A stretch of 63,571 nucleotides of DNA, filler included, from Octopus bimaculoides (taxonomy: Eukaryota): NCBI RefSeq assembly GCF_001194135.2. It is 5 parts of 5 records of this genome, joined end to end, with 100 filler letters (N's around TTAATTAATTAA, not from the genome) between each part and the next. Parts side by side here need not be neighbours in the genome. Positions count along the whole stretch, not along the records: positions 1 to 27,254 come from NC_068986.1; 4 more parts are not named here. One strand, given 5' to 3'. Below, in pieces: positions 608-25,329 of this stretch (positions are counted from its first letter, which is position 1; each line of letters opens with the position of its first letter). The notes below the pieces were generated by a model. That model was not told where the DNA came from, searched no databases, and worked only from the letters and a program-made list of their open reading frames with translations. The position numbers were made by a program, and so were the translations under genes.

Positions 608-1522
608 TTAATTTGATGTAGACTGTAATGAATATACTGTACTTCTACTCACGTATGTCTTTTTAGAACATATGTGTTTCAAATTGTGACGAAATGATTT
701 GCTAATCCCAACATACAAAATAAAGTTGATAACATTATTAATACAAGCTATACTATCCAAAAAAGTATACATGACCATATTACTTTCATTTTGGAGTGAC
801 AACACCAAGAAATAAATAGATGCAGGAAACGTTGTTACCAGAAACAGTAAGTTTATAGCGATGACGACATAAATGGTATTTCTGGACTGCTCAGATGGAT
901 TGCGTTGAACATGCTGGCCAAGGTCGGGTCGATGGAGTATTTTATACACCAATAAAATAGAACTGATTATTAAAATCACAGCTGGTAAGAAGGAATAAAT
1001 CAAGAGTGCTGCACACAGAGTATATAGTTCATTCTTTAAAAATACTGTGAGCATTGTATACGTAACAACAACACATACACAAAGCAAAAAGAGTACGATG
1101 TAAGGCTTATAACGTCCAGAAGAATGAAATCTGGAAAACGGCCAAAAAATTGCCAACAGACGTTCGAGAGATATGATAACGGTTATCCAGGAGGAATATA
1201 TATTTATGGAAAAACTGACGGCTCCATATATTTCACTGTTATAAATACCTGTAAGTGACATTATGTCAGAATGCAAAGTTGATGATTGCCATATGATCCT
1301 TACGTAATTTAGCCAAATAACAGTGAAATCCACAACAGACAAACAATGAAGATATGGAACGATTTTAGTCTGGCGCATTTTCTTCTTCAAAAATATTACA
1401 AAAACGGCAAAATTCCCAATAGATCCAAATATTAATAAAATAATTGAAACATACTGTATACTTCTACGGAAATGTATATTTGAATCACTATGTGTCCGGC
1501 TACTATTGGGCATTGGGTCCAT
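608..1522 (-). CDS. Intronless rhodopsin-like (class A) GPCR, FMRFamide-receptor-like/orphan type, 304 aa (copy 1)
   Basis: Uninterrupted ATG-to-stop ORF with seven hydrophobic segments. Class A motifs: GSIGN (TM1), LSVVD (TM2), SLERLLAI (TM3), FLP (TM5), TTFP (TM6), NNVINFILY (TM7), SKSFR (helix 8). Confidence 0.92.
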   Translation of the reverse strand: MDPMPNSSRTHSDSNIHFRRSIQYVSIILLIFGSIGNFAVFVIFLKKKMRQTKIVPYLHCLSVVDFTVIWLNYVRIIWQSSTLHSDIMSLTGIYNSEIYGAVSFSINIYSSWITVIISLERLLAIFWPFSRFHSSGRYKPYIVLFLLCVCVVVTYTMLTVFLKNELYTLCAALLIYSFLPAVILIISSILLVYKILHRPDLGQHVQRNPSEQSRNTIYVVIAINLLFLVTTFPASIYFLVLSLQNESNMVMYTFLDSIACINNVINFILYVGISKSFRHNLKHICSKKTYVSRSTVYSLQSTSN

Positions 1523-3585: not shown

Positions 3586-3711
3586 TTCTTCTTCTTCTTC
3601 TTCTTCTTCTTCTTCTTCTTCTTCTTCTTCTTCTTCTTCTTCTTCTTCTTCTTCTTCTTCTTCTTCTTCTTCTTCTTCTTCTTCTTCTTCTTCTTCTTCT
3701 TCTTCTTCTTC
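3586..3711. repeat. (TTC)n/(GAA)n microsatellite
   Basis: Pure trinucleotide run. It produces the poly-K and poly-E ORFs in the track. Confidence 0.98.
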
Positions 3712-4140
3712 ACCTTTGTCTGCTTCCAGCATAACTTGAGCAATATTTGCCTTCATCTTTGTTGGGACATTGCCATCAAATGTGGACAGAGCCACAATTT
3801 TGTTTGCTAAGTACCAGAGATAAATGGAATTTTTTTCGGAGAATGCTTACCGATTTGTGGATCAATTTCCTAATAATTTAACAGTTGATGCATGAATAGG
3901 AAATCGTTATAATGTGCTTTAATTGATTCTGATGACAGAATCCATGCTCGAACACCCTCCAGAAAATATACTGGTGCACCAGCATGACCGCAGCCACTTG
4001 GCTGAAACACATAAATAAATAAATTCCACTTAAGGGTTTTTTCTCCCCAGGAGATAACTGAAGTTGATCTTGAAACAAGTATATCCTGAATGCATAAATT
4101 GCTTTTGAAATCCACCTAGCATCACTTAAATCTCCTAGTG

Positions 4141-4523
4141 TTGTTGTTGGCACTCCGTCGCTTACGACGTCGAGGGTCCAGTTGATTCGATCAACGGAAC
4201 AGCCTGCTCGTGAAATTAATGTGCAAGTGGCTGAGCACTCCACAGACACGTGTACCCTTAACGTAGCTCTCGAGGATATTCAGCGTGACACAGTGTGACA
4301 AGGCTGACCCTTTGAATTACAGGCACAACAGAAACAGGAAGTAAGAGTGAGAGAAAGTTGTGGTGGAAGAGTACAGCAGGGTTCGCCACCATCCCCTGCC
4401 GGAGCCTCGTGTAGCTTTAGGTGTTTTCGTTCAATAAACACTCACAACGCCCAATCTGGGAATCGAAACCGCGATCCTATGACCGCGAGTCCACTGCCCT
4501 AACTACTGGGCCATTGCGCCTCC
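4141..4523 (-). mobile_element. Full-length tRNA-derived SINE (family A1)
   Basis: Minus-strand head GGAGGCGCAATGGCCCAGTAGTT (A box) and GGTTTCGATTCCC (B box); ends in a (CAA)n tail. The same head recurs at ~53210-53262 and the same 3' half at 36656-36840. Confidence 0.85.
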
Positions 4524-5931
4524 CAAGCTCCTAGTATATGAATGCATAAATTGCTTTTGACATCCGCCTAGCATGACTTAAAGCTCCTGGTGTACGAAAT
4601 GATATCCGGTTCTTCAGACATTTGCCATGAAAGATCATCGTTAACTCCAACAATTCTCGGTAATCATTTCGCTGTTGCTATTTCTGCGTAGGAAGATGGT
4701 ATTCAAGAAATCCAAGAATGGTAGAGTGAATATCATCAAGCACTTCACTGCCAGTAGTTATGTAAACCTTCCTACTGAGTTTCTTCCAGGTTTCTTTAAA
4801 TCTTTTGAAAAATGCTGTCTGGACAAGAAGTTGCGCCTATCAGAGACTCAAAACAGATCCTAAAAATTAACTCAAAAATATGATAACGGCAAGAGAAGTA
4901 CAATGGGTCGCAATTGAACAATTTTTCTAGATTTGCACAGGCGCCACTCACTCGGCCTATGTTGCTTGCTGTCGTGTCTGAATTTTGTCGGTTATACACT
5001 TACTTCTCCACGGCTTGTAAAATAGCCATGGCTTGCTATTCTTCTGAAGATGTTAGAATTTCAGGGACTCACAACATTTTCTCTTTGCCTTGAAAAGTTA
5101 ATATTATTGCCAATTTATCAACCTTTTCAACGCCTGTGAATCCTTGGAACAGCTTTCCATCCCAGTGCAGCACTAATTCTTGATAGTCGTTTAGGTTAAA
5201 TTTGTGCTGTATTTCTGTCTCACTTCTTTCGCTTTTGTTATAAGGCGTTGAAAATATGTATACAAAGCTCATAATATAAAAGAGGAGTTATGAACATGAT
5301 ATTACAACTTTGTTAGAGATAGCAAAACAACAGGGGAGGATCTATATCATAATGCCCCACAACAAAATCAATGAGTGCTTACAAGTTATTACAAATATAT
5401 TAACTTTTATTTACAGACGCTGACAAATATTAGTTCACTGTTCATCACTAACGTATATTTCTTAATATTCTATTTCTCAACACTACCATTAGGTGCAGTA
5501 CAGTTCTTTCAATGGACAAACGCAACTCACTCGCATACGGCCGAACACTGACTGGATGACAATGAAAAATAGGTGTTTGCTCAATACCTGTGCTCTGTCC
5601 CCAGCTTTGCAACTTGCCTTCCTCCCATTATATTTATTGTCACTTATCCTTCTATTACCAAGAATAAGTTTTTAATTTAAGAGAAAATTATATCAGATAA
5701 AAAAAAATCTGGGAAAATGACAAACTTCAAAATTTCATGGTTGACGAAGGTGACCTCGCATTTGTTCGATTAAGCTAAAATTGTGCATAGTTTGATATTT
5801 TGTTACTTGGAACAGGAGTAGGTGTGGAGTTAACATTTGAAAAATAAAGGCCACCCTGATACATATATATATATATATATATATTGTAAAAAAGAGAGAG
5901 TGAGTGAGAGAGAGGGCGACAGATTTATATT

Positions 5932-7759: not shown

Positions 7760-9830
7760 CTACATTGACCACAAAATGTTCGTATTTCCCACTTGAAATC
7801 GTCATATTTGTTTATTTTTCCTTCTTTCACAGTGATTCTGTTGTCGCCGTAGCACGCTACGTAGATTTCTCTTTAATCACCGGCTACCGAAGTCTGGTCG
7901 AGTTATCGTATTGGATCATTGCATCCCACAGGATTTTGCAATTTTAATTTTCTGTGACTCCTGGAGTTTACTCATACTACGCCTTTGCACTTTGAAGGAC
8001 CTGTTTGTCATAGCGACTTTGGTATTCGCATTGTGTCAATTTCGAACATTCGCTAACGATGTGCCATACCGCTTCACCCCTCTCACCACACATTCTGCAT
8101 TTTTCGCTTCGCCAAACCAATTACATTTGTATTTGATGTAACTAGTTCTTAATGTTTACTCTTGGGCAGCACAGATTAGAGCCACTGTTCCCGGTTTTAA
8201 ATCAATTTTAGTCATCCATAGTCAACATTTTTCTGTCGGTCTTATCTTCAACATCCCTATGAAATTGTCCATGCATTCTTTTCTTTATCCACTTAGTTTC
8301 AGTTTTATTCATTCTCAAGTGCCTGTAGAACGCATTATCTTTGTAATCGTCCATCCTACACGAGCCTGACATTCTGACTTCCAATAATAGTGGTTCTGTA
8401 GCATCTTTTACACATCATGCTATGTTGTTTTCTACTACTGTAATGCTGTGTTCGCATCCCATCAGCCCTCTTCCCCCTCTTTTTCTTCATACATACACTC
8501 TGCTTGTATCCTTTTTTGGATGGAGTATCCCATATCTATGCAGCAACTTCCCTGTCTTTCTGTCTAAGCTGTTTAGTTCTTCTACTGTTCATGCGATTAC
8601 CTCTGCTCCGTATCTAAGGAGTGAAACCGCTCAGGTGTTGATAGCTTTGATCTTATTCCGTCTGTTTAATTTCTTCTTAAGTATCAGTTTCAGTCTGCGG
8701 AAGTACTCCACCTTAAATTTTTCTGTCATTTCTTTCTCCACCAATTTATCCATTTCGAATGTCCCTGAGTACTTATAGCCCGTGTCTTCTATTTGTTTCA
8801 TAACTTCCCTCGATGGTATCGCTAGCGTGTCCATAAATTTCATTTTGCTTCTCTTTAAGTCTAACACACCACACGTTTTCAGTCCGAACTCCATTTTGAT
8901 ATCAGCAATGAAAGTATACACCATATCAACGAGGAAACTGATTTGGGATTCATGAATAATGTGTGGTTGACTTTCTGTTGGCGGCTTTTGAATTCATACC
9001 CAGCTTTTGTTTACTCAGAATCAGTGTTAGTATTATCATGCACAGTGCAAATATCAGTAGGGGCAGGTAGTCTCCCTGGAAGATGCCTCTCCAGATTTTT
9101 ATTGTCTCTAAACTTCTTCCATATGCTGTCAGTTCCGTCGTCCTCTTCCCAAGCAATCGTTCAACATTCGATGCAATACCAAACAGGTTCATATATTCCA
9201 TGATCCGAGAATGTGGGATCATATCGTATGCCTTACGATTATCAATCCATGACATGGCTAAGTTACTTTTCCTCCTCTTGCACTCTCTAAGTACAGTTTT
9301 GTCTTCCAGGAGTTGATCCTTGGTACCTCTGAACTTACGCTTGCACCACTTCTGCTCATGTAGCTTGACTCCATTTTTTTTTTTCAGATGTCCGTACATT
9401 GACTCTGTGACTATTTCAGTCAATAATTTCCACATAAGAGGAAAGCAGGATAATGACATGTGATTGCCTTTTTGAATGTTTTTCAAACACAGCACTGTCC
9501 TACTCATTGTCAATTTCTCTAGTGTTACTTCGTCGGCATTTAACATGGTGTTGAGTTTTGTAGCTATTCGTGCATGACACTCACCAGATAGCTTCATCCA
9601 GTAGTCTCAAACTCTATCTGGTCCCGGGGCCATCTAGTCGCCCATTTTTTGCTAATTTCCTTTACTTGCCTAACTGAAATGTGTAGTTCCGTCTGTTGTG
9701 GGCAGACGACTGTTTGTTTCAGTTCTTGCAACCATCCAGCATCCTTCTTGTGGTCCATGTCTTCGCTCCATAGATTCTGGACGCCTGTTTTGAAAGTTCT
9801 CAGAGCCCATCCAGCCATTCGCTTTCACTT
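7760..9830 (-). mobile_element. Decayed, 5'-truncated R4/Dong-clade non-LTR retrotransposon
   Basis: RT motifs WIDNRKAYDMIPHS, RGIFQGD.LPLLIF and KYSG; downstream CRMCGERGEAVWHIVSEC (CCHC knuckle) and KINKYDDFKWEI (restriction-like endonuclease region). Multiple stops. Confidence 0.85.
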
Positions 9831-13069: not shown

Positions 13070-13340
13070 ATAAAAGTTTAGAATAGGAGGCACGTAGATA
13101 TCATAGGAATTCGCATATCCACTGGGATAGCAGAGCTACTGGGTAAGATTTTAGAAGATACGATTCTTGGAGCGAAGAGAGCAGAGATAAGCGGTGATAT
13201 ACGTATGGAAGATCCTAGAGGGATTGGCACTAAACTTGTCATCGAAAGTCATACCAGCCTCGGGAAAGATGTCATTGTACTGTTCTAAGTTTCCGTCTAG
13301 TGTGCGGACCAGATACTGCAGTAGCTTGGGATTCAAATAT
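13070..13340 (-). mobile_element. Highly decayed LINE RT C-terminal fragment
   Basis: LDGNLEQ..IFPEAGMTFDDKFSAN...AY....KNRIF...YVPPILNFY resembles the DLGVTFDxKL...YVRPILEY pattern of CR1/L2/jockey RTs. Confidence 0.45.
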
Positions 13341-13689
13341 TCATTGTTATTTAATATCTTGCGAAAACATCCAAGAAGGCTGACAGGAGTAGTGGCAGAT
13401 GTTTTCATCAAATAACAATTTTATTTTCTGCTCTCCAAAATCCAGACGAACCTACATTTCGAAAGTGGAAAACTTGACTCATTGACCCGAAATTTTGGAG
13501 TTGTACTTTCCTAACAAGAAATTAGATTTAAGGCAGTGAATTATCATCAAGAAAACTATAGATGTTAGAAGTGTATTAATCACAAAAAAAAAGTATTTTA
13601 CGTGATTTTGGTTGGCTAATATGTATCTTCCACACTGTAATCATACATTCTTTTATCCTTTTAATTTTCTCAGTCATTTCACTGCGGCC

Positions 13690-14057
13690 ATGTTAATTCT
13701 CTAAATGAGGTATTAACAGTAACTGCACGATAAAGTGAAGTATATTGCCACTTAAATGTGGCTGACCCCTAGGGGTGGATGTTACTGTTGCTTTTAGCCC
13801 CAGGAGGACATCTCCTCCAGCTGGCTTATCGACACACTTCTGTGTCCTGTTTGTTTTGCCAAGGGAATTTATCCCTCTCATCATGATCTGTAGCACGAAC
13901 GGACCCGCGTTTCAGGGTTATTTCCCTTCGTCAGCGTCCGATAGCCACCGATCTGCGATGAGAGAGATAATTCTTGGCAACCTTATGTATCTTTTTCCAG
14001 TGAAATTATTCACTGATATCGAAAAAGTGAAAACAAGCAATGTTAATTCTCTAAATG
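13690..14057 (-). repeat. 350-bp hammerhead-containing unit plus the start of a second direct copy (retrozyme-like or Penelope pLTR-like)
   Basis: ATGTTAATTCTCTAAATG occurs at 13690-13707 and again at 14040-14057, where the sequence runs into a 740-N gap. Many internal hairpins. Confidence 0.7.
13896..13940 (-). ncRNA. Canonical type I hammerhead ribozyme; predicted GUC cleavage between 13902 and 13901
   Basis: Minus strand reads CGGACG-CTGACGA-AGGG(aaataa)CCCT-GAAA-C(gcgg)G-TC-CGTTCG. Core is complete; stem I has 6 bp (one G.U), stem II 4 bp, stem III 2 bp. Confidence 0.9.
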
Positions 14058-14805
14058 NNNNNNNNNNNNNNNNNNNNNNNNNNNNNNNNNNNNNNNNNNN
14101 NNNNNNNNNNNNNNNNNNNNNNNNNNNNNNNNNNNNNNNNNNNNNNNNNNNNNNNNNNNNNNNNNNNNNNNNNNNNNNNNNNNNNNNNNNNNNNNNNNNN
14201 NNNNNNNNNNNNNNNNNNNNNNNNNNNNNNNNNNNNNNNNNNNNNNNNNNNNNNNNNNNNNNNNNNNNNNNNNNNNNNNNNNNNNNNNNNNNNNNNNNNN
14301 NNNNNNNNNNNNNNNNNNNNNNNNNNNNNNNNNNNNNNNNNNNNNNNNNNNNNNNNNNNNNNNNNNNNNNNNNNNNNNNNNNNNNNNNNNNNNNNNNNNN
14401 NNNNNNNNNNNNNNNNNNNNNNNNNNNNNNNNNNNNNNNNNNNNNNNNNNNNNNNNNNNNNNNNNNNNNNNNNNNNNNNNNNNNNNNNNNNNNNNNNNNN
14501 NNNNNNNNNNNNNNNNNNNNNNNNNNNNNNNNNNNNNNNNNNNNNNNNNNNNNNNNNNNNNNNNNNNNNNNNNNNNNNNNNNNNNNNNNNNNNNNNNNNN
14601 NNNNNNNNNNNNNNNNNNNNNNNNNNNNNNNNNNNNNNNNNNNNNNNNNNNNNNNNNNNNNNNNNNNNNNNNNNNNNNNNNNNNNNNNNNNNNNNNNNNN
14701 NNNNNNNNNNNNNNNNNNNNNNNNNNNNNNNNNNNNNNNNNNNNNNNNNNNNNNNNNNNNNNNNNNNNNNNNNNNNNNNNNNNNNNNNNNNNNNNNNGCC
14801 CATCG

Positions 14806-14825
<20 letters not shown>

Positions 14826-14837
<12 letters not shown>

Positions 14838-14960
14838 TATATACGACGGGGTTCTTTCAGTTCTCGCCTGCCAAATCCACTCACAAGGCTTTAATCGGGC
14901 CGCGGCTAGAGTACAATACACTTTCGCAAGGTGCCACTATGTGTTTGGGAAGCATGCTTC
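14826..14960 (-). mobile_element. SINE fragment (family C)
   Basis: Matches 22110-22270 and 33085-33235 (GCACCTTG...GGCCGAT.AAAGCCTT.TGAGTGGATTTG). Confidence 0.7.
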
Positions 14961-15841
14961 GTCTCCAACAGCTTCGCCTGCGCCTTTAAATCTAAATCTT
15001 ATTGAAATCCACAAAGGTATGGATTTCAGTTATCATATTTGTGAAAACTTGGAGAAAGAGAACATGTTACGAAACGTCAATCAGAAACGTTTAAAAAGGC
15101 CCAAAATAGTTTCCTATGTCAACGGTTGTCTGTCAATTGGGGTCAATAATAGCTTTGGAGATATATGTAAGATTATTTGTTGATACAATTGATGTACAAT
15201 AAATTCGTTTTATTTCTACAATGCATAAAATTTTGTAACTATATTTTTATATAACTTCTAGTAATAATTAATTATAAAAAAAAATATAATAGGACATTTA
15301 AACATGAAATGGCTATGACGAAGCATCTAAATAAAATAGGGTTACAGAAATCTATAGATATTTTTGAAAAATGGCTGAGAAATATTGGCCGATGGGATAT
15401 TGATGAGCTTTCAACAACACATCGAAGACTCCCCGCTCTCTTTCGAAAATATGTCCGAACTCTCTCAGAAAATATGTCCGAAAGCTGTTTAGGAACAGGT
15501 AGAGAGTATGTTGCGCCCAGGCTATTAATTAGAAAATTATAAATGTGAAACCTCGACATATATCTTAATGCGTTTGAATATATTATAATTTATATATATA
15601 TATATATATATATAAGCAAACACACACGCACAGATACACATAAGCGAATGTGGAAGGATGAAAAGGAGTTCTCAACACCGCATTGATGGATATATATATA
15701 TATCAATTACGTACAGCATGTGGAATGATTGACAAGAAAATATACATTGATAATACATAAATGATAATTGTTAGGATAGCTAGATATATTTAGGTAGATA
15801 GATACTTACTGAACCGGTAAGTTACTCAAAAATGAAAAGAC

Positions 15842-16768
15842 TTATGTCGTTGAATTCTGCAGCGAATACACCACATTTCTGTTCACTGCAGTCACTTTAC
15901 AAAACATTTGTTTCAAATTGTCGCGAAATGATTTGCTTCCGACAACATACATCATAAAGTTGAATACGTTATTGATACAAGCTAACATGTCCAAAAATAG
16001 GTATAAAACCGTATTCATGTTGTTTAGTAGTGACATCACCACATAATAAATAGATGTAGGGAAAGTTGTTAGAAGAAAAAGCGAGTTTATAGCGATGACA
16101 ACATAAACGGTACTCTTTTTCTTCTCTGAGGAATTTCTTTGAAAATTTTGACCGAGGTATGGTCGATGCAGTAATTTGTGTAACATAAGAATGGAACTTA
16201 TGAACAATATCATAGCTGGTATGAATGCATAAATGAAGTGTACAATACACAAAGCATACACTTTATTGTTCAAAAATTCTGTCAACATTGTATACATAAC
16301 AGTAACACATACAAGAAGACAAAGCAGCACAATATAAGGTTTATAACTTCCAGAAGAATTAAATCTGGAAAATGGGGAAAAAATTGCCAAAAGACGTTCA
16401 ACAGATATGATAACAGTTATCCAGGAGGAATACATATATATACAAAAAGTGAATCCCACATATAATTTACTGTTGAATATACCTGCATATGACCTGTTAT
16501 ATTGAAAATTAGTTGATAGCCATATTAATTTTGGTAAATATATCGAAATAGCAATGAAATCCACTAGAGCCAAGCAATGAAGATATGGAACAATTTTAGT
16601 TTGACGCATTTTCTTCCTGAAAAAAATTACAAAAACGGCTAAATTTCCGATAGATCCAAGTATCAATAAAATTATTGAACCATATCGTATAGTTATAAGA
16701 AAATGTATATTCGTATAGTTTTCTGTCTGGTTACTGTTGGTCGATGTGTTCACTTCTGTTTTGTTCAT
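15842..16768 (-). CDS. Intronless class A GPCR, 308 aa (copy 2, paralogue of 608-1522)
   Basis: Intact ORF with the same motifs (GSIGN, KKMRQTKIVPYLHCL, SVERLLAI, TTFP, NNVFNFMMY, SKSFR). Colinear with copy 1 apart from the N-terminus and a 1-aa indel. Confidence 0.92.
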   Translation of the reverse strand: MNKTEVNTSTNSNQTENYTNIHFLITIRYGSIILLILGSIGNLAVFVIFFRKKMRQTKIVPYLHCLALVDFIAISIYLPKLIWLSTNFQYNRSYAGIFNSKLYVGFTFCIYMYSSWITVIISVERLLAIFSPFSRFNSSGSYKPYIVLLCLLVCVTVMYTMLTEFLNNKVYALCIVHFIYAFIPAMILFISSILMLHKLLHRPYLGQNFQRNSSEKKKSTVYVVIAINSLFLLTTFPTSIYYVVMSLLNNMNTVLYLFLDMLACINNVFNFMMYVVGSKSFRDNLKQMFCKVTAVNRNVVYSLQNSTT

Positions 16769-22270: not shown

Positions 22271-23096
22271 GTATATGTATATATATATATGCGAGTAAAA
22301 ATAAATACAAAAAAAAGGGGTTTTGTATGATTGTGTATAGAGGGATATATTATTTTGTTTAAAAGAGTTCCAACACTGTCTGTTTTTTATGTTTTATTTA
22401 TATTCCTGCAAAACCTATGTGGGATATAGAATATGGAATATACAATATATAATATAATATACAGTATATAACATAAAATAAAAATGGATGGTACAATGAA
22501 ATAAAGTATTGAATGTCTTATTGAATATATGGAATATGTCTTATTGAATAGATGAAATATTGAGTGTTCAATATAAAGGATTAAATATATAAAGGCGAAT
22601 ACGTATTTTCTATNNNNNNNNNNNNNNNNNNNNNNNNNNNNNNNNNNNNNNNNNNNNNNNNNNNNNNNNNNNNNNNNNNNNNNNNNNNNNNNNNNNNNNN
22701 NNNNNNNNNNNNNNNNNNNNNNNNNNNNNNNNNNNNNNNNNNNNNNNNNNNNNNNNNNNNNNNNNNNNNNNNNNNNNNNNNNNNNNNNNNNNNNNNNNNN
22801 NNNNNNNNNNNNNNNNNNNNNNNNNNNNNNNNNNNNNNNNNNNNNNNNNNNNNNNNNNNNNNNNNNNNNNNNNNNNNNNNNNNNNNNNNNNNNNNNNNNN
22901 NNNNNNNNNNNNNNNNNNNNNNNNNNNNNNNNNNNNNNNNNNNNNNNNNNNNNNNNNNNNNNNNNNNNNNNNNNNNNNNNNNNNNNNNNNNNNNNNNNNN
23001 NNNNNNNNNNNNNNNNNNNNNNNNNNNNNNNNNNNNNNNNNNNNNNNNNNNNNNNNNNNNNNNNNNNNNNNNNNNNNNNNNNNNNNNNNNNNNNNN

Positions 23097-23415
23097 CAAG
23101 AGTGGGTTTGAATTTCTTAATAAAGTCCTTTTCTTTGCATTTTCTCTCAATTTCATTTCGCTTGTAAAGTTTATGGAATGGAAATATAATAAAAGTTTGA
23201 TGACCACATGTTGCCAGATGGTTACTCAGTGGTATTTGGCGGACTTCTGGGTTTTTAATCTGTTGTCGATGCACCCGTGAGCGTTCCGATAGTGCATTAC
23301 CTGTCTGGCCAACGTACAGTTCTTCACAATTAGGGCATTTGATGCAGTAGATTAGATTTCTACTTTTGCAGTTCATGTTCACATTGGTGAATATTTTCCC
23401 TGTTTTTGTGTTCAT
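23097..23415 (-). mobile_element. Penelope-like element GIY-YIG endonuclease domain (3' end of the ORF)
   Basis: NCKSRNLIYCIKCPNCEELYVGQTGNALSERSRVHRQQI...LSNHLATCGH...ERKCKEKDFIKKFKPTL: GIY-YIG pattern with the Penelope-type CCHH. Runs into a gap. Confidence 0.9.
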
Positions 23416-23469
23416 ATATGGGCCGGTATGGATTGATCGGCATGTACCGCATCATCAGTATGTATTTCT

Positions 23470-23829: not shown

Positions 23830-24534
23830 TTTTACCAAGTATTATTATTAGACGGAGAGAAACTGTGTTAGCAGAAAGAACGAGTTTATTGCAATGACTG
23901 CTTTGTTGAATTCTGTTGCAAATGTGACCGAGGTCGAGTCGATGGAATATTCATTATTAAATAAGGATAGAAGTCATTATTAAAAACACACCTGGTAGGA
24001 ATGAATAAATGAATTGTACATCACTCAAATTATACGTTCCATTTTTTAGAAAAGCCCTGCCAGCATTGTATACCTAACAGAAACACATGCATGAAGAAAG
24101 AGCAGTACAAGGTGAGACTTAAAACGTTGAAATGATTAAGGTCTGGACAAGGGAGGAAAACTTTCAACAAGAAAAAGGGGGTTCAAGAGATATGATAACA
24201 GCTATCCAGGAATAATATATACATACGGAAGAATTGAGGGACTCATATATTTCACAGTTTTAATCACCTGTATGAGCTATCTAAGCATTGCAAAATAGTT
24301 GACGGCCATATAATTGTTGTAAAAATATCGAAATAGCATTGAAATCTAGAAGAGCCAAACAATGAAGATACGCATCCGTTTCATGAAAAATAATTCAAAA
24401 ACTGTAAAATTCCTGATAGATCCAAAGGTCAATAAAATTACTGAAACATACCGTTTAGTTCTAAGAACATGAATATTTGTATCGTCTTCTATTTGGTTAC
24501 TGTTAGTCCGTACGTCCATTTCTGTTTTGTTCAT
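23830..24534 (-). pseudogene. GPCR pseudogene (copy 3, closest to copy 2)
   Basis: Starts MNKTEMDVRTNSNQIEDDTNIHV (copy 2: MNKTEVNTSTNSNQTENYTNIHF). A 19-nt deletion after ATGCGT shifts the frame. Nucleotide homology continues to the end of TM6, then SINE sequence begins. Confidence 0.88.
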
Positions 24535-25329
24535 ATTTTCTTCTACATCATCCACTGGACAGACGCTGTTGACAACAAAAATTGCTAAATGAATCTATTT
24601 TTTATTATATACTCTAAAAGACACCTTAAAATGCCACGCCTTGTTTACATATTTGCATAATACATCAAGCGTTATCATATATATATATGTCTTTCTATGT
24701 TATGTAGGTAAAAAGAAAGATATGCCTGTATGTATATACATGGCTATACGTGTATACAGGCATAGTTACAATGTGGCTTGCGTAGTTTCTACTGGCTGAG
24801 TATATAATGCTGTAGTTACTATAAACTTCTTAATGTTAATGAGATCGACAACGAGAACAATGACGATGATGATCTAGGTGAAGATTCTGACGATGATGAC
24901 ATGACAATGATGATCGTGATATGAATTGGAAGTGAAGTGAAGATCACCACTATAATTACGATTATGTTGTGAAGGTGATTATCTACGCTGGTTGATGGTG
25001 ATGCTGTAACTTTTATAATAGCATTTATATCGATTTGGCATGAAAAGCATAAATGAATCGATATCATGTTTTATTATAAAACTTACTAGACTACTTCCTG
25101 TCAAAGGTTTGATCACTGTTAAGTAACTGGAGCATTTCCGGTGTGGCCTTACTTAAAACTCTTCTGTAAGTTTTAACAAAATCAGTTACTTGCCTAAAGT
25201 ACATACCAGACCGTCATTTAATGAAATCATCATCATCAGATATAATTACTGCTTAATATGGCTTCTGAAAGAGTCAGTTAGTTTATCTTGTTTCTATTTG
25301 CGCATAATTTTTAATCATAGCAGACATCA

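What the first reader, a model, noticed from the sequence alone, without database searches (positions are those of the whole stretch)
13690..14057. 350-bp unit repeating into a gap: candidate octopus retrozyme or circRNA source
Seen: an 18-nt exact direct repeat with a 350-nt period brackets a unit holding one intact hammerhead, and the second copy runs straight into a 740-N gap. No meaningful ORF. Known: metazoan non-LTR retrozymes are tandem units of a few hundred bp with one type I hammerhead each; transcripts self-cleave to monomers that circularise. Inference: a tandem array here would release a 350-nt monomer, possibly a family not described in cephalopods. A Penelope pLTR direct repeat or a simple 18-bp TSD are the alternatives.
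Basis: partly seen in the sequence, partly recalled or inferred. Interest (0 to 1): 0.92.

Follow-up and report, generated by a model that had tools for sequence, protein, structure and literature searches.

The report
Hammerhead-ribozyme repeat unit beside assembly gap
A 350-bp non-coding insert carrying one well-formed self-cleaving hammerhead ribozyme starts a second copy of itself just before an assembly gap; it looks like an ordinary animal "retrozyme" (a known small circular-RNA retroelement), here apparently in a cephalopod, but a true tandem array could not be shown.

Summary
ATGTTAATTCTCTAAATG occurs exactly twice (13690-13707 and 14040-14057, period 350), and the second copy abuts a 740-N gap. 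This is far beyond chance.

A complete type I hammerhead lies on the MINUS strand (13940->13896). Helix I is 6 bp, helix II 4 bp, and helix III 2 bp with a tetraloop. That is the architecture published for invertebrate non-LTR retrozymes. No Rfam model detects it.

The 350-nt unit is 43% GC, has no ORF with any relative, and folds as a circle far better than shuffles (z = -7.7).

New context: the unit is an insertion into a SINE-like repeat. The repeat's 5' arm ends at 13693 and its 3' arm resumes after the gap. The self-repeat begins at that junction, with 4 nt of microhomology. This fits target-primed reverse transcription of a circular or multimeric RNA that ran more than one lap. It argues against an 18-bp TSD and against an ORF-flanking Penelope pLTR.

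A second hammerhead in the gap, other genomic copies and a circRNA remain untested. Every route to other assemblies or copies failed.

Verdict: probable new member of a known kind (metazoan non-LTR retrozyme). Interest is modest.

The parts
13643..13693 (+). 5' arm of a SINE-like repeat, the target that was interrupted. Its homology to the other copy in the window stops exactly at ...CCATGT (13693).
   Evidence: blastn and local alignment to 23677-23627: 51 nt, 78% identity, E about 1e-6. The reference copy continues GGAGCACC, whereas this locus continues TAATTCTC.
13690..13693 (.). ATGT microhomology at the target/insert junction (6 of 7 nt if GCNATGT is counted). It is shared by the SINE arm and by the unit's own sequence at 14040-14043.
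   Evidence: Direct reading. 13687-13693 is GCCATGT and 14037-14043 is GCAATGT.
13690..14039 (-). One complete 350-nt unit (ribozyme sense is the minus strand). GC is 43%, and no ORF has relatives. The predicted circular RNA is strongly structured.
   Evidence: Circular MFE is -122.0 kcal/mol against -80.4 +/- 5.4 for 200 dinucleotide shuffles, z = -7.7. There are no protein relatives in any frame and no tRNA-like part.
13896..13940 (-). Type I hammerhead ribozyme.
- Helix I: 13940-13935 pairs with 13901-13896 (6 bp).
- Core CUGACGA: 13934-13928.
- Helix II: AGGG (13927-13924) pairs with CCCU (13917-13914), with loop AAAUAA.
- GAA: 13913-13911.
- Helix III: A-U and C-G (13910-13909 with 13904-13903), with loop GCGG.
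- C17 is at 13902. The predicted cleavage lies between 13902 and 13901.
   Evidence: Descriptor scan and shuffles. The enforced hammerhead fold is feasible at -43.8 kcal/mol, against an MFE of -50.9 for the 116-nt context. It is not detected by Rfam.
13867..13972 (-). Long imperfect hairpin that carries the hammerhead at its tip. Helix I is extended by 5 + 4 + about 14 bp, interrupted by internal loops. The first internal loop (UAU/U) comes after 6 bp, where loop 1 of canonical type I hammerheads lies.
   Evidence: Fold. The inverted repeat is visible.
14040..14057 (-). Start of a second lap of the unit (head-to-tail junction ...AACAAGCA|ATGTTAATT...). It is cut off by the gap.
14058..14797 (.). 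Assembly gap (740 N). It must hold the missing roughly 169 nt of the SINE-like repeat. If the gap size is a real estimate, it also holds about 500-570 nt more of insert, which is about 1.5 units.
   Evidence: Gap lengths in the window vary (552, 740, 779, 285, 10, 483), so they look like estimates rather than a fixed placeholder. The missing SINE length comes from copy 2. The unit count is inference only.
14798..14990 (+). Microsatellite (TA)n at 14806-14843 and the 3' arm of the same SINE-like repeat, in the same orientation as the 5' arm.
   Evidence: blastn of 14819-14936 to 22290-22174: 76% over 119 nt, E about 1e-17. TRF result.

Best explanation
The feature is a copy of a metazoan non-LTR retrozyme-type element. 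It is a small non-coding retroelement whose RNA carries a type I hammerhead ribozyme.

Shown here:
- One full 350-nt unit with one hammerhead on the minus strand.
- The first 18-21 nt of the next unit.
- The whole thing sits inside a SINE-like repeat.

Inferred mechanism:
1. Ribozyme-sense RNA from a source array is cut at GUC|C by its hammerheads into 350-nt monomers.
2. Host tRNA ligase circularises the monomers, as published for other animals.
3. A reverse transcriptase from an autonomous element, most likely a Penelope-like element, uses such a circle or an uncut multimer as template.
4. At this locus the nicked plus strand ending ...GCCATGT-3' paired with ...ACAUUGC... in the RNA.
5. The cDNA, which is the plus strand, was extended rightwards from 13694 through the whole unit.
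6. At 14040 it re-entered the point where it had started. This requires a template longer than one unit, either circular or multimeric.

Whether this locus holds a second hammerhead, and so can itself release a monomer, depends on what is in the gap.
For: - The repeat is real and far beyond chance.
- The hammerhead has every invariant core nucleotide. Its helices are 6 bp, 4 bp and 2 bp with a tetraloop. PMC4209133 gives helix I 6 bp, helix II 4 bp and helix III 1-2 bp with a 2-4 nt loop for canonical metazoan type I hammerheads. [quoted passage not shown]
- The unit size of 350 bp lies in the published 150-450 bp range and matches the mussel repeats of 350-390 bp. GC of 43% is below 50%.
- There is no ORF with relatives and no tRNA-like head.
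- The predicted circle is unusually stable, z = -7.7. Retrozyme circRNAs are described as highly self-paired.
- The unit is an insertion in a SINE-like repeat, and the self-repeat starts within 4-7 nt of that junction, with microhomology. This is expected if the insert starts there and runs more than one lap. It would be a coincidence under a TSD model.
- A Penelope-like GIY-YIG fragment is in the same window. Retrozymes co-occur with PLEs.
Against: - Only 18-21 nt of a second unit are visible, and 4 of them could belong to the target.
- No Rfam hammerhead model scores the motif, even at E<=10 on 116 nt.
- The closing pair of helix II is A10.1-U11.1 rather than the usual G-C. From my own knowledge, this may lower activity.
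- The nearest-neighbour MFE of the local region is an alternative fold 7 kcal/mol below the hammerhead fold.
- There is no second copy of the unit in the 27-kb window. None was found in any reachable collection, so a multicopy family is not shown.
- No expression data were available.
- Short-read contig ends next to gaps can be unreliable.
Confidence: 0.6

Rival explanations
1. A solitary hammerhead-bearing retroposon of about 332 nt (13708-14039), flanked by an 18-21-nt target-site duplication. There is one ribozyme only, so no monomer or circle is produced from this locus.
For: - The duplication length is in the range of TPRT-type TSDs.
- The plus-strand end next to the second copy is A-rich (GAAAAAGTGAAAACAAGCA).
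- Monomeric retrozyme derivatives are common in other animals.
- Another insert in this window, at about 4142-4538, is flanked by a 55-nt direct repeat.
Against: - Fourteen of the 18 nt are not SINE sequence. The SINE arm stops at 13693, and the reference copy continues GGAGCACC.
- The model therefore needs an earlier, unrelated break of the SINE that happens to lie inside the 18-21-nt duplication. That is roughly a 2% coincidence over a 1-kb neighbourhood.
- The A-rich end would make the ribozyme antisense to the retroposed RNA.
Confidence: 0.15
2. The unit is a pseudo-LTR of a Penelope-like element whose ORF lies in the gap, or it is a partial tandem of 5'-truncated PLE copies.
For: PLE pLTRs carry hammerheads, and PLEs insert as partial tandems. 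A PLE endonuclease fragment is present 9 kb away, also inside a copy of the same SINE-like repeat. Retrozymes are proposed to derive from pLTRs.
Against: - The repeat period is 350 nt with no ORF between copies.
- There is no RT or GIY-YIG similarity in or next to the unit.
- The nominal gap (740 N, minus about 170 nt of SINE) cannot hold a 2.5-3 kb ORF.
- The hammerhead has the canonical 6/4-bp shape. It lacks the PLE min-HHR shape of helix II 7-8 bp and helix I 4-5 bp.
- There is no similarity between the unit and the PLE fragment's 3' region in the window.
Confidence: 0.08
3. Assembly artefact. The last 18 nt of the contig come from mis-extension or gap-closing with reads from other copies, or from a collapsed repeat, so the local head-to-tail junction does not exist at this locus.
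For: The junction lies at the very end of a contig next to a gap in what looks like a short-read scaffold with many estimated gaps. Repeats are a common cause of such breaks.
Against: Reads reading ...AACAAGCA|ATGTTAATTCTCTAAATG must exist somewhere, so a unit-to-unit junction exists in the genome even if not here. A contig break at the start of a second identical unit is what tandem repeats cause.
Confidence: 0.1

Closest known systems
Metazoan non-LTR retrozymes (Cervera & de la Pena 2020, PMC7229834), especially the Mytilus galloprovincialis repeats of about 350-390 bp
   Same: - Type I hammerhead with helix III of 2 bp plus a tetraloop.
- Unit of about 350 bp, GC below 50%.
- No ORF, LTR, PBS or PPT.
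- Strongly self-paired predicted circle.
- Co-occurrence with PLEs.
- Mollusc host.
   Different: - Only 1.05 units are visible, against dimers to 62-mers described.
- Copy number and circRNA expression are unknown.
- Helix II closes with A-U.
- The host appears to be a cephalopod. The best named relative of a neighbouring GPCR is from Octopus sinensis. I found no retrozyme report for cephalopods in the library.
Newt/axolotl satellite 2 repeats (330-350 bp) with type I hammerheads
   Same: Unit length is the same, the type I hammerhead has a short helix III, and the logic of tandem transcripts to monomers to circles is the same.
   Different: The amphibian HHR_Amex1 has a 1-bp helix III and needs dimers. 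The motif here has 2 bp plus a tetraloop, like invertebrate motifs and HHR_Amex2. No sequence relationship was tested.
Penelope-like element pLTR min-hammerheads (Cervera & de la Pena 2014, PMC4209133)
   Same: A hammerhead in a repeated non-coding terminal region of a TPRT-type retroelement, with tandem or partial-tandem insertion.
   Different: PLE min-HHRs have a long helix II (7-8 bp), a short helix I (4-5 bp) and no defined helix III, and their repeats flank an RT-EN ORF. None of this is seen here.
Schistosoma Sm-alpha SINE-like hammerhead elements (about 335 bp; size from my own knowledge, not from a tool)
   Same: A non-coding repeat of about 330-350 bp with a canonical type I hammerhead that has tandem and dispersed forms.
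   Different: Sm-alpha has a Pol III/tRNA-like head. No tRNA-like part was found here.

Membership tests
Hammerhead ribozyme, type I | Invariant core: C3 U4 G5 A6 N7 G8 A9, G12 A13 A14, A15.1-U16.1, H17 not G | tested here: met
   CUGACGA ... GAA-A ... U-C at 13934-13902 on the minus strand.
Hammerhead ribozyme, type I | Three helices around the core, with helix I open and helices II and III closed by loops. Canonical metazoan sizes are I 6 bp, II 4 bp, and III 1-2 bp with a 2-4 nt loop (PMC4209133). | tested here: met
   Helices are 6 bp, 4 bp (loop AAAUAA) and 2 bp (loop GCGG). There were 0 such motifs in 300 simulated windows. The enforced fold is feasible.
Hammerhead ribozyme, type I | Match to the curated Rfam covariance models (Hammerhead_1 and relatives) | tested here: not met
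   No hammerhead family is listed at gathering score or at E<=10 on 761-nt and 116-nt slices. I did not establish the reason.
Hammerhead ribozyme, type I | Self-cleavage 3' of H17 | not testable with these tools
   This needs in vitro transcription of the monomer and dimer.
Metazoan non-LTR retrozyme | Repeat unit of about 150-450 bp with GC below 50% | tested here: met
   Period 350; GC 43%.
Metazoan non-LTR retrozyme | Head-to-tail tandem of two or more units, each with a type I hammerhead | tested here: inconclusive
   One unit plus 18-21 nt of the next, then 740 N. The nominal gap budget allows about 1.5 more units, which is inference.
Metazoan non-LTR retrozyme | No ORF, LTR, PBS or PPT | tested here: met
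   No frame has any relative and no tRNA-like part was found. PBS and PPT were not searched for specifically.
Metazoan non-LTR retrozyme | Monomer predicted to form a stable, highly self-paired circle | tested here: met
   Circular MFE of -122 against -80 +/- 5 for shuffles, z = -7.7, with 60% of bases paired.
Metazoan non-LTR retrozyme | Multicopy family in the genome | not testable with these tools
   There is one copy in the 27-kb window. No eukaryotic genome collection can be searched by DNA. Protein-word and pattern scans found nothing.
Metazoan non-LTR retrozyme | Expressed as linear and circular RNA of unit length | not testable with these tools
   No RNA data were available.
Metazoan non-LTR retrozyme | Co-occurrence with autonomous PLEs in the genome | tested here: met
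   GIY-YIG domain fragment at 23097-23450 on the minus strand, Pfam PF01541, E 1.1e-6. It is 5'-truncated, so autonomy is not shown.
Penelope-like element pseudo-LTR | Direct repeats flanking a single RT + GIY-YIG ORF | tested here: not met
   The repeat copies are adjacent (period 350) with no ORF between them. There is no RT/EN similarity in or beside the unit.
Penelope-like element pseudo-LTR | min-HHR architecture (helix II 7-8 bp, helix I 4-5 bp, little or no helix III) | tested here: not met
   Helix II is 4 bp, helix I is 6 bp, and helix III is 2 bp with a tetraloop.
Simple target-site duplication of a solo insert | The duplicated sequence is pre-existing target sequence | tested here: not met
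   The target is a SINE-like repeat whose homology ends at 13693. The remaining 14 nt do not match its continuation GGAGCACCGCC. The test rests on a single reference copy.

The most novel reading that the evidence does not exclude
This would be a previously undescribed cephalopod family of non-LTR retrozymes whose 350-nt RNA circularises. The locus would preserve the start point of target-primed, rolling-circle reverse transcription: a primer ...GCCATGT-3' annealed to ...ACAUUGC... in the circle, with the cDNA running more than one lap. It would therefore be direct genomic evidence for the proposed circRNA-templated mobilisation of animal retrozymes.
Probability: 0.4. Interest if true: 0.45.

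Novelty: new member of a known kind. Interest (0 to 1): 0.3.

Why it matters
If confirmed, it would extend hammerhead retrozymes and their abundant small circRNAs to cephalopods, a lineage with unusual RNA biology. It would also give a clean insertion junction (target, microhomology, more than one lap) that supports mobilisation from circular or multimeric RNA by a TPRT-type reverse transcriptase. It would not change the picture of what retrozymes are. The class, its size range, its ribozyme shape and its presence in molluscs are already published.

Tried and rejected
- **Rfam.** Three cmscan runs listed no hammerhead. Weak hits to snoRNA, miRNA and RT-4 models are all far below gathering score and were treated as chance.
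- **Crossing the gap through another assembly.** Exact-protein look-ups of the neighbouring GPCR ORF and of its 255-aa form P0001 returned nothing on record. Homologues of the GPCR are at most 60% identical and on contigs of about 1-1.5 kb, apart from a 41% paralogue in Octopus sinensis. No orthologous locus could be reached.
- **Finding other copies through called ORFs.** The 94-aa plus-strand ORF and a 705-aa query covering all six frames of a unit trimer found nothing.
- **DNA pattern scans.** The 26-nt hammerhead pattern gave 0 hits in metagenome, viral and prokaryote genome contigs. A looser hammerhead pattern gave two metagenome hits (L001, L002). Neither has a credible helix I, so I judged them chance.
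- **Extension of the repeat to the left.** An apparent similarity of 13610-13640 to 13975-14005, seen by eye, was not supported by blastn and was dropped.
- **The 86-aa ORF at 13151-13411 (minus).** I tested whether it is a PLE ORF downstream of the unit. It has no Pfam hit. Its only library hits are two long proteins, the better one matched in 17 separate stretches, whose Pfam rows show no stretch that passes on its own. It is also separated from the unit by the SINE arm. I rejected it as part of the element.
- **TSD of the SINE-like repeat itself.** None was found. That the two arms belong to one SINE copy therefore rests on order, orientation and spacing only.
- **tRNA-like head.** None was found.
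- **Literature.** The held library has no paper on retrozymes or hammerheads in cephalopods (one search was uninformative).

Full report
**Observation.** ATGTTAATTCTCTAAATG occurs at 13690-13707 and again at 14040-14057. With one mismatch the match is 21 nt (13687-13707 and 14037-14057), spaced 350 nt. The second copy ends at the first N of a 740-N run, 14058-14797.

The 18-mer has two matches in the window against none in 100 shuffles, even with two mismatches allowed. In simulated sequence of the same dinucleotide make-up, no window contained an exact 18-mer direct repeat spaced 50-1000 nt. A contig-end 14-mer recurs in the preceding 1 kb with probability of about 5e-5. The repeat is not chance.

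**The hammerhead.** Rfam gave no hammerhead at gathering score over the whole piece. It gave none at E<=10 on 761 nt or on a 116-nt slice. Reading the sequence shows a complete motif on the minus strand, 13940->13896: CGGACG / CUGACGA / AGGG-AAAUAA-CCCU / GAA / AC-GCGG-GU / C | CGUUCG.

All invariant core positions are canonical. Helix I has 6 bp, helix II 4 bp with a 6-nt loop, and helix III 2 bp with a tetraloop. Cleavage would fall between 13902 and 13901.

A helix-aware descriptor that I wrote finds this and nothing else on either strand of the window. It found nothing in 300 simulated windows at this stringency, and hits in about 1% of windows at a relaxed one. The core-only scan also finds only this site.

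The shape is the one published for canonical metazoan type I hammerheads: helix I 6 bp, helix II 4 bp, helix III 1-2 bp with a 2-4 nt loop (PMC4209133). [quoted passage not shown] It is not the Penelope min-HHR shape of helix II 7-8 bp and helix I 4-5 bp.

Three reservations apply:
- The Rfam miss is unexplained.
- Helix II closes with A-U instead of the usual G-C.
- In a 116-nt context the thermodynamic optimum is an alternative pairing 7 kcal/mol below the enforced hammerhead fold. Nearest-neighbour models ignore the tertiary contacts of the core.

The motif sits at the tip of a long imperfect hairpin (13867-13972). An internal loop follows the sixth pair of helix I, where loop 1 of canonical type I motifs lies.

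**The unit.**
- The 350 nt from 13690 to 14039 are 43% GC.
- Folded as a circle in ribozyme polarity, the MFE is -122.0 kcal/mol against -80.4 +/- 5.4 for 200 dinucleotide shuffles (z = -7.7). The other polarity gives z = -6.2.
- The longest reading frame has no relative, and neither does any of the six frames of a unit trimer.
- No tRNA-like part is present.
- The unit occurs only once in the 27-kb piece.

**Context: the unit is an insertion in a SINE-like repeat.** 13643-13693 matches 23677-23627 (51 nt, 78%, E about 1e-6). 14819-14936, just after the gap, matches 22290-22174 (76% over 119 nt, E about 1e-17).

Those two targets are the 5' and 3' parts of a second copy of one repeat, on the minus strand. 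That copy is itself split, near its internal microsatellite, by a 5'-truncated Penelope-like element fragment with a GIY-YIG domain. From my own memory the repeat resembles an abundant octopus SINE. That is a lead, not a test.

The reference copy reads ...GCGTCCATGT|GGAGCACCGCC. The locus here reads ...GCGGCCATGT|TAATTCTCTAAATG, and the alignment ends exactly at 13693. So the insert begins at 13694, or at 13690 if the shared ATGT is assigned to it. The self-repeat begins at the same place.

About 169 nt of the SINE-like repeat, plus microsatellite, are missing between the arms and must lie in the gap. Gap lengths in the piece vary (552, 740, 779, 285, 10, 483), so they look like estimates. Taken at face value, the gap has room for a further 500-570 nt of insert, about 1.5 units. 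This is inference only.

**What the junction implies.**

A simple TSD would be made of target sequence. Fourteen of the 18 nt are not SINE sequence. The TSD reading therefore needs an earlier, unrelated break of the SINE that happens to lie inside the 18-21-nt duplication.

The retrozyme reading explains the coincidence directly. The plus strand is the cDNA of ribozyme-sense RNA. A plus-strand 3' end ...GCCATGT can pair with ...ACAUUGC... in that RNA, with 4 contiguous matches and 6 of 7 overall. Extension from there gives TAATTCTC... at 13694 and runs rightwards through the unit. After ...AACAAGCA (14039) it meets ATGTTAATT... again. The template was therefore longer than one unit, either a circle or a multimer.

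This is the mobilisation scheme proposed for animal retrozymes: primed circRNA giving tandem cDNA copies, with PLEs as the likely source of the enzyme (PMC7229834 discussion; bioRxiv 10.64898/2026.07.22.740005). A purified PLE protein starts reverse transcription at internal sites of its RNA (PMC11167929). That shows internal starts are within the repertoire of these enzymes, although that paper reports no homology to the target at the start site.

A pLTR-ORF-pLTR layout is not compatible with two copies that touch each other at a 350-nt period without an ORF. No RT or EN similarity lies in or beside the unit.

**What is not shown.** I could not obtain sequence across the gap, other copies of the unit, or RNA evidence.
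- Exact-protein look-ups for the neighbouring GPCR gave nothing.
- Its homologues are paralogues or lie on very short contigs.
- Pattern scans of the three DNA collections found nothing relevant.

The existence of a second hammerhead at this locus, the copy number of the family and the circular RNA all remain predictions. An assembly artefact at the contig end cannot be excluded. Even then, reads with a unit-to-unit junction must exist somewhere in the genome.

**Comparison and novelty.** The element works like, and on the features testable here fits, the metazoan non-LTR retrozymes. The closest described case is the mussel family of 350-390 bp. The defining tandem arrangement is inconclusive, so I file it as a probable member, not a proven one.

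The held literature has no report of retrozymes or hammerheads in cephalopods. PMC8557442 discusses PLEs in cephalopods only as old Naiad remnants.

The finding is therefore a new member of a known kind.

**Scores.**
- 0.9 that the hammerhead motif is a real type I motif.
- 0.6 that the locus is a retrozyme-type insertion of more than unit length.
- About 0.5 that the gap holds a second hammerhead.
- Interest 0.3. The mechanism and class are known and a mollusc precedent exists. The junction is a neat but single example.

Noticed in passing
window 23097-23458 (-), with 22300-22613 (-) beyond the gap 22614-23096: A 5'-truncated Penelope-like element fragment. Its ORF ends in a CxxC...GIY-YIG endonuclease domain (Pfam PF01541, E 1.1e-6). 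It is inserted near the internal microsatellite of a second copy of the SINE-like repeat (5' part 23677->23458, 3' part 22290->22130). No hammerhead core was found in its visible AT-rich 3' region.
   Followed up: partly
window 608-1522 (-), 15842-16768 (-), about 24100-24650 (-): Two intact paralogous rhodopsin-type/Srw-like GPCR ORFs (304 and 308 aa; Pfam 7tm_1 and 7TM_GPCR_Srw), plus a third copy with stops and frameshifts. This is a tandem GPCR cluster on the same strand as the hammerhead. The best named relative, from Octopus sinensis, is only 41% identical.
   Followed up: partly
window 4087-4141 and 4539-4593: A 55-nt direct repeat (about 89% identical, 22 nt exact) flanks a roughly 400-bp insert. 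By eye the right end of the insert looks tRNA-derived on the minus strand, but ARAGORN finds no tRNA. It may be a SINE with an unusually long target duplication, or an insertion into a local duplication.
   Followed up: partly
window 8950-9597 (-), neighbouring ORFs to about 10213: A fragmented non-LTR (LINE-type) reverse transcriptase (Pfam RVT_1, E 6.5e-9), with adjacent broken ORFs on the same strand.
   Followed up: no
window 13151-13411 (-): An 86-aa ORF 230 nt beyond the SINE arm. It has no Pfam hit. Its only library matches are two long proteins (1903 and 1199 aa), the better one matched in 17 separate stretches, whose Pfam rows show no stretch that passes on its own. It is probably not a gene and not part of the element.
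   Followed up: yes
window 3586-3711: A perfect (TTC)42 microsatellite, read as a poly-Glu run in a minus-strand ORF. The piece contains many other di- and tetranucleotide arrays and six N gaps of varying, estimated length.
   Followed up: no
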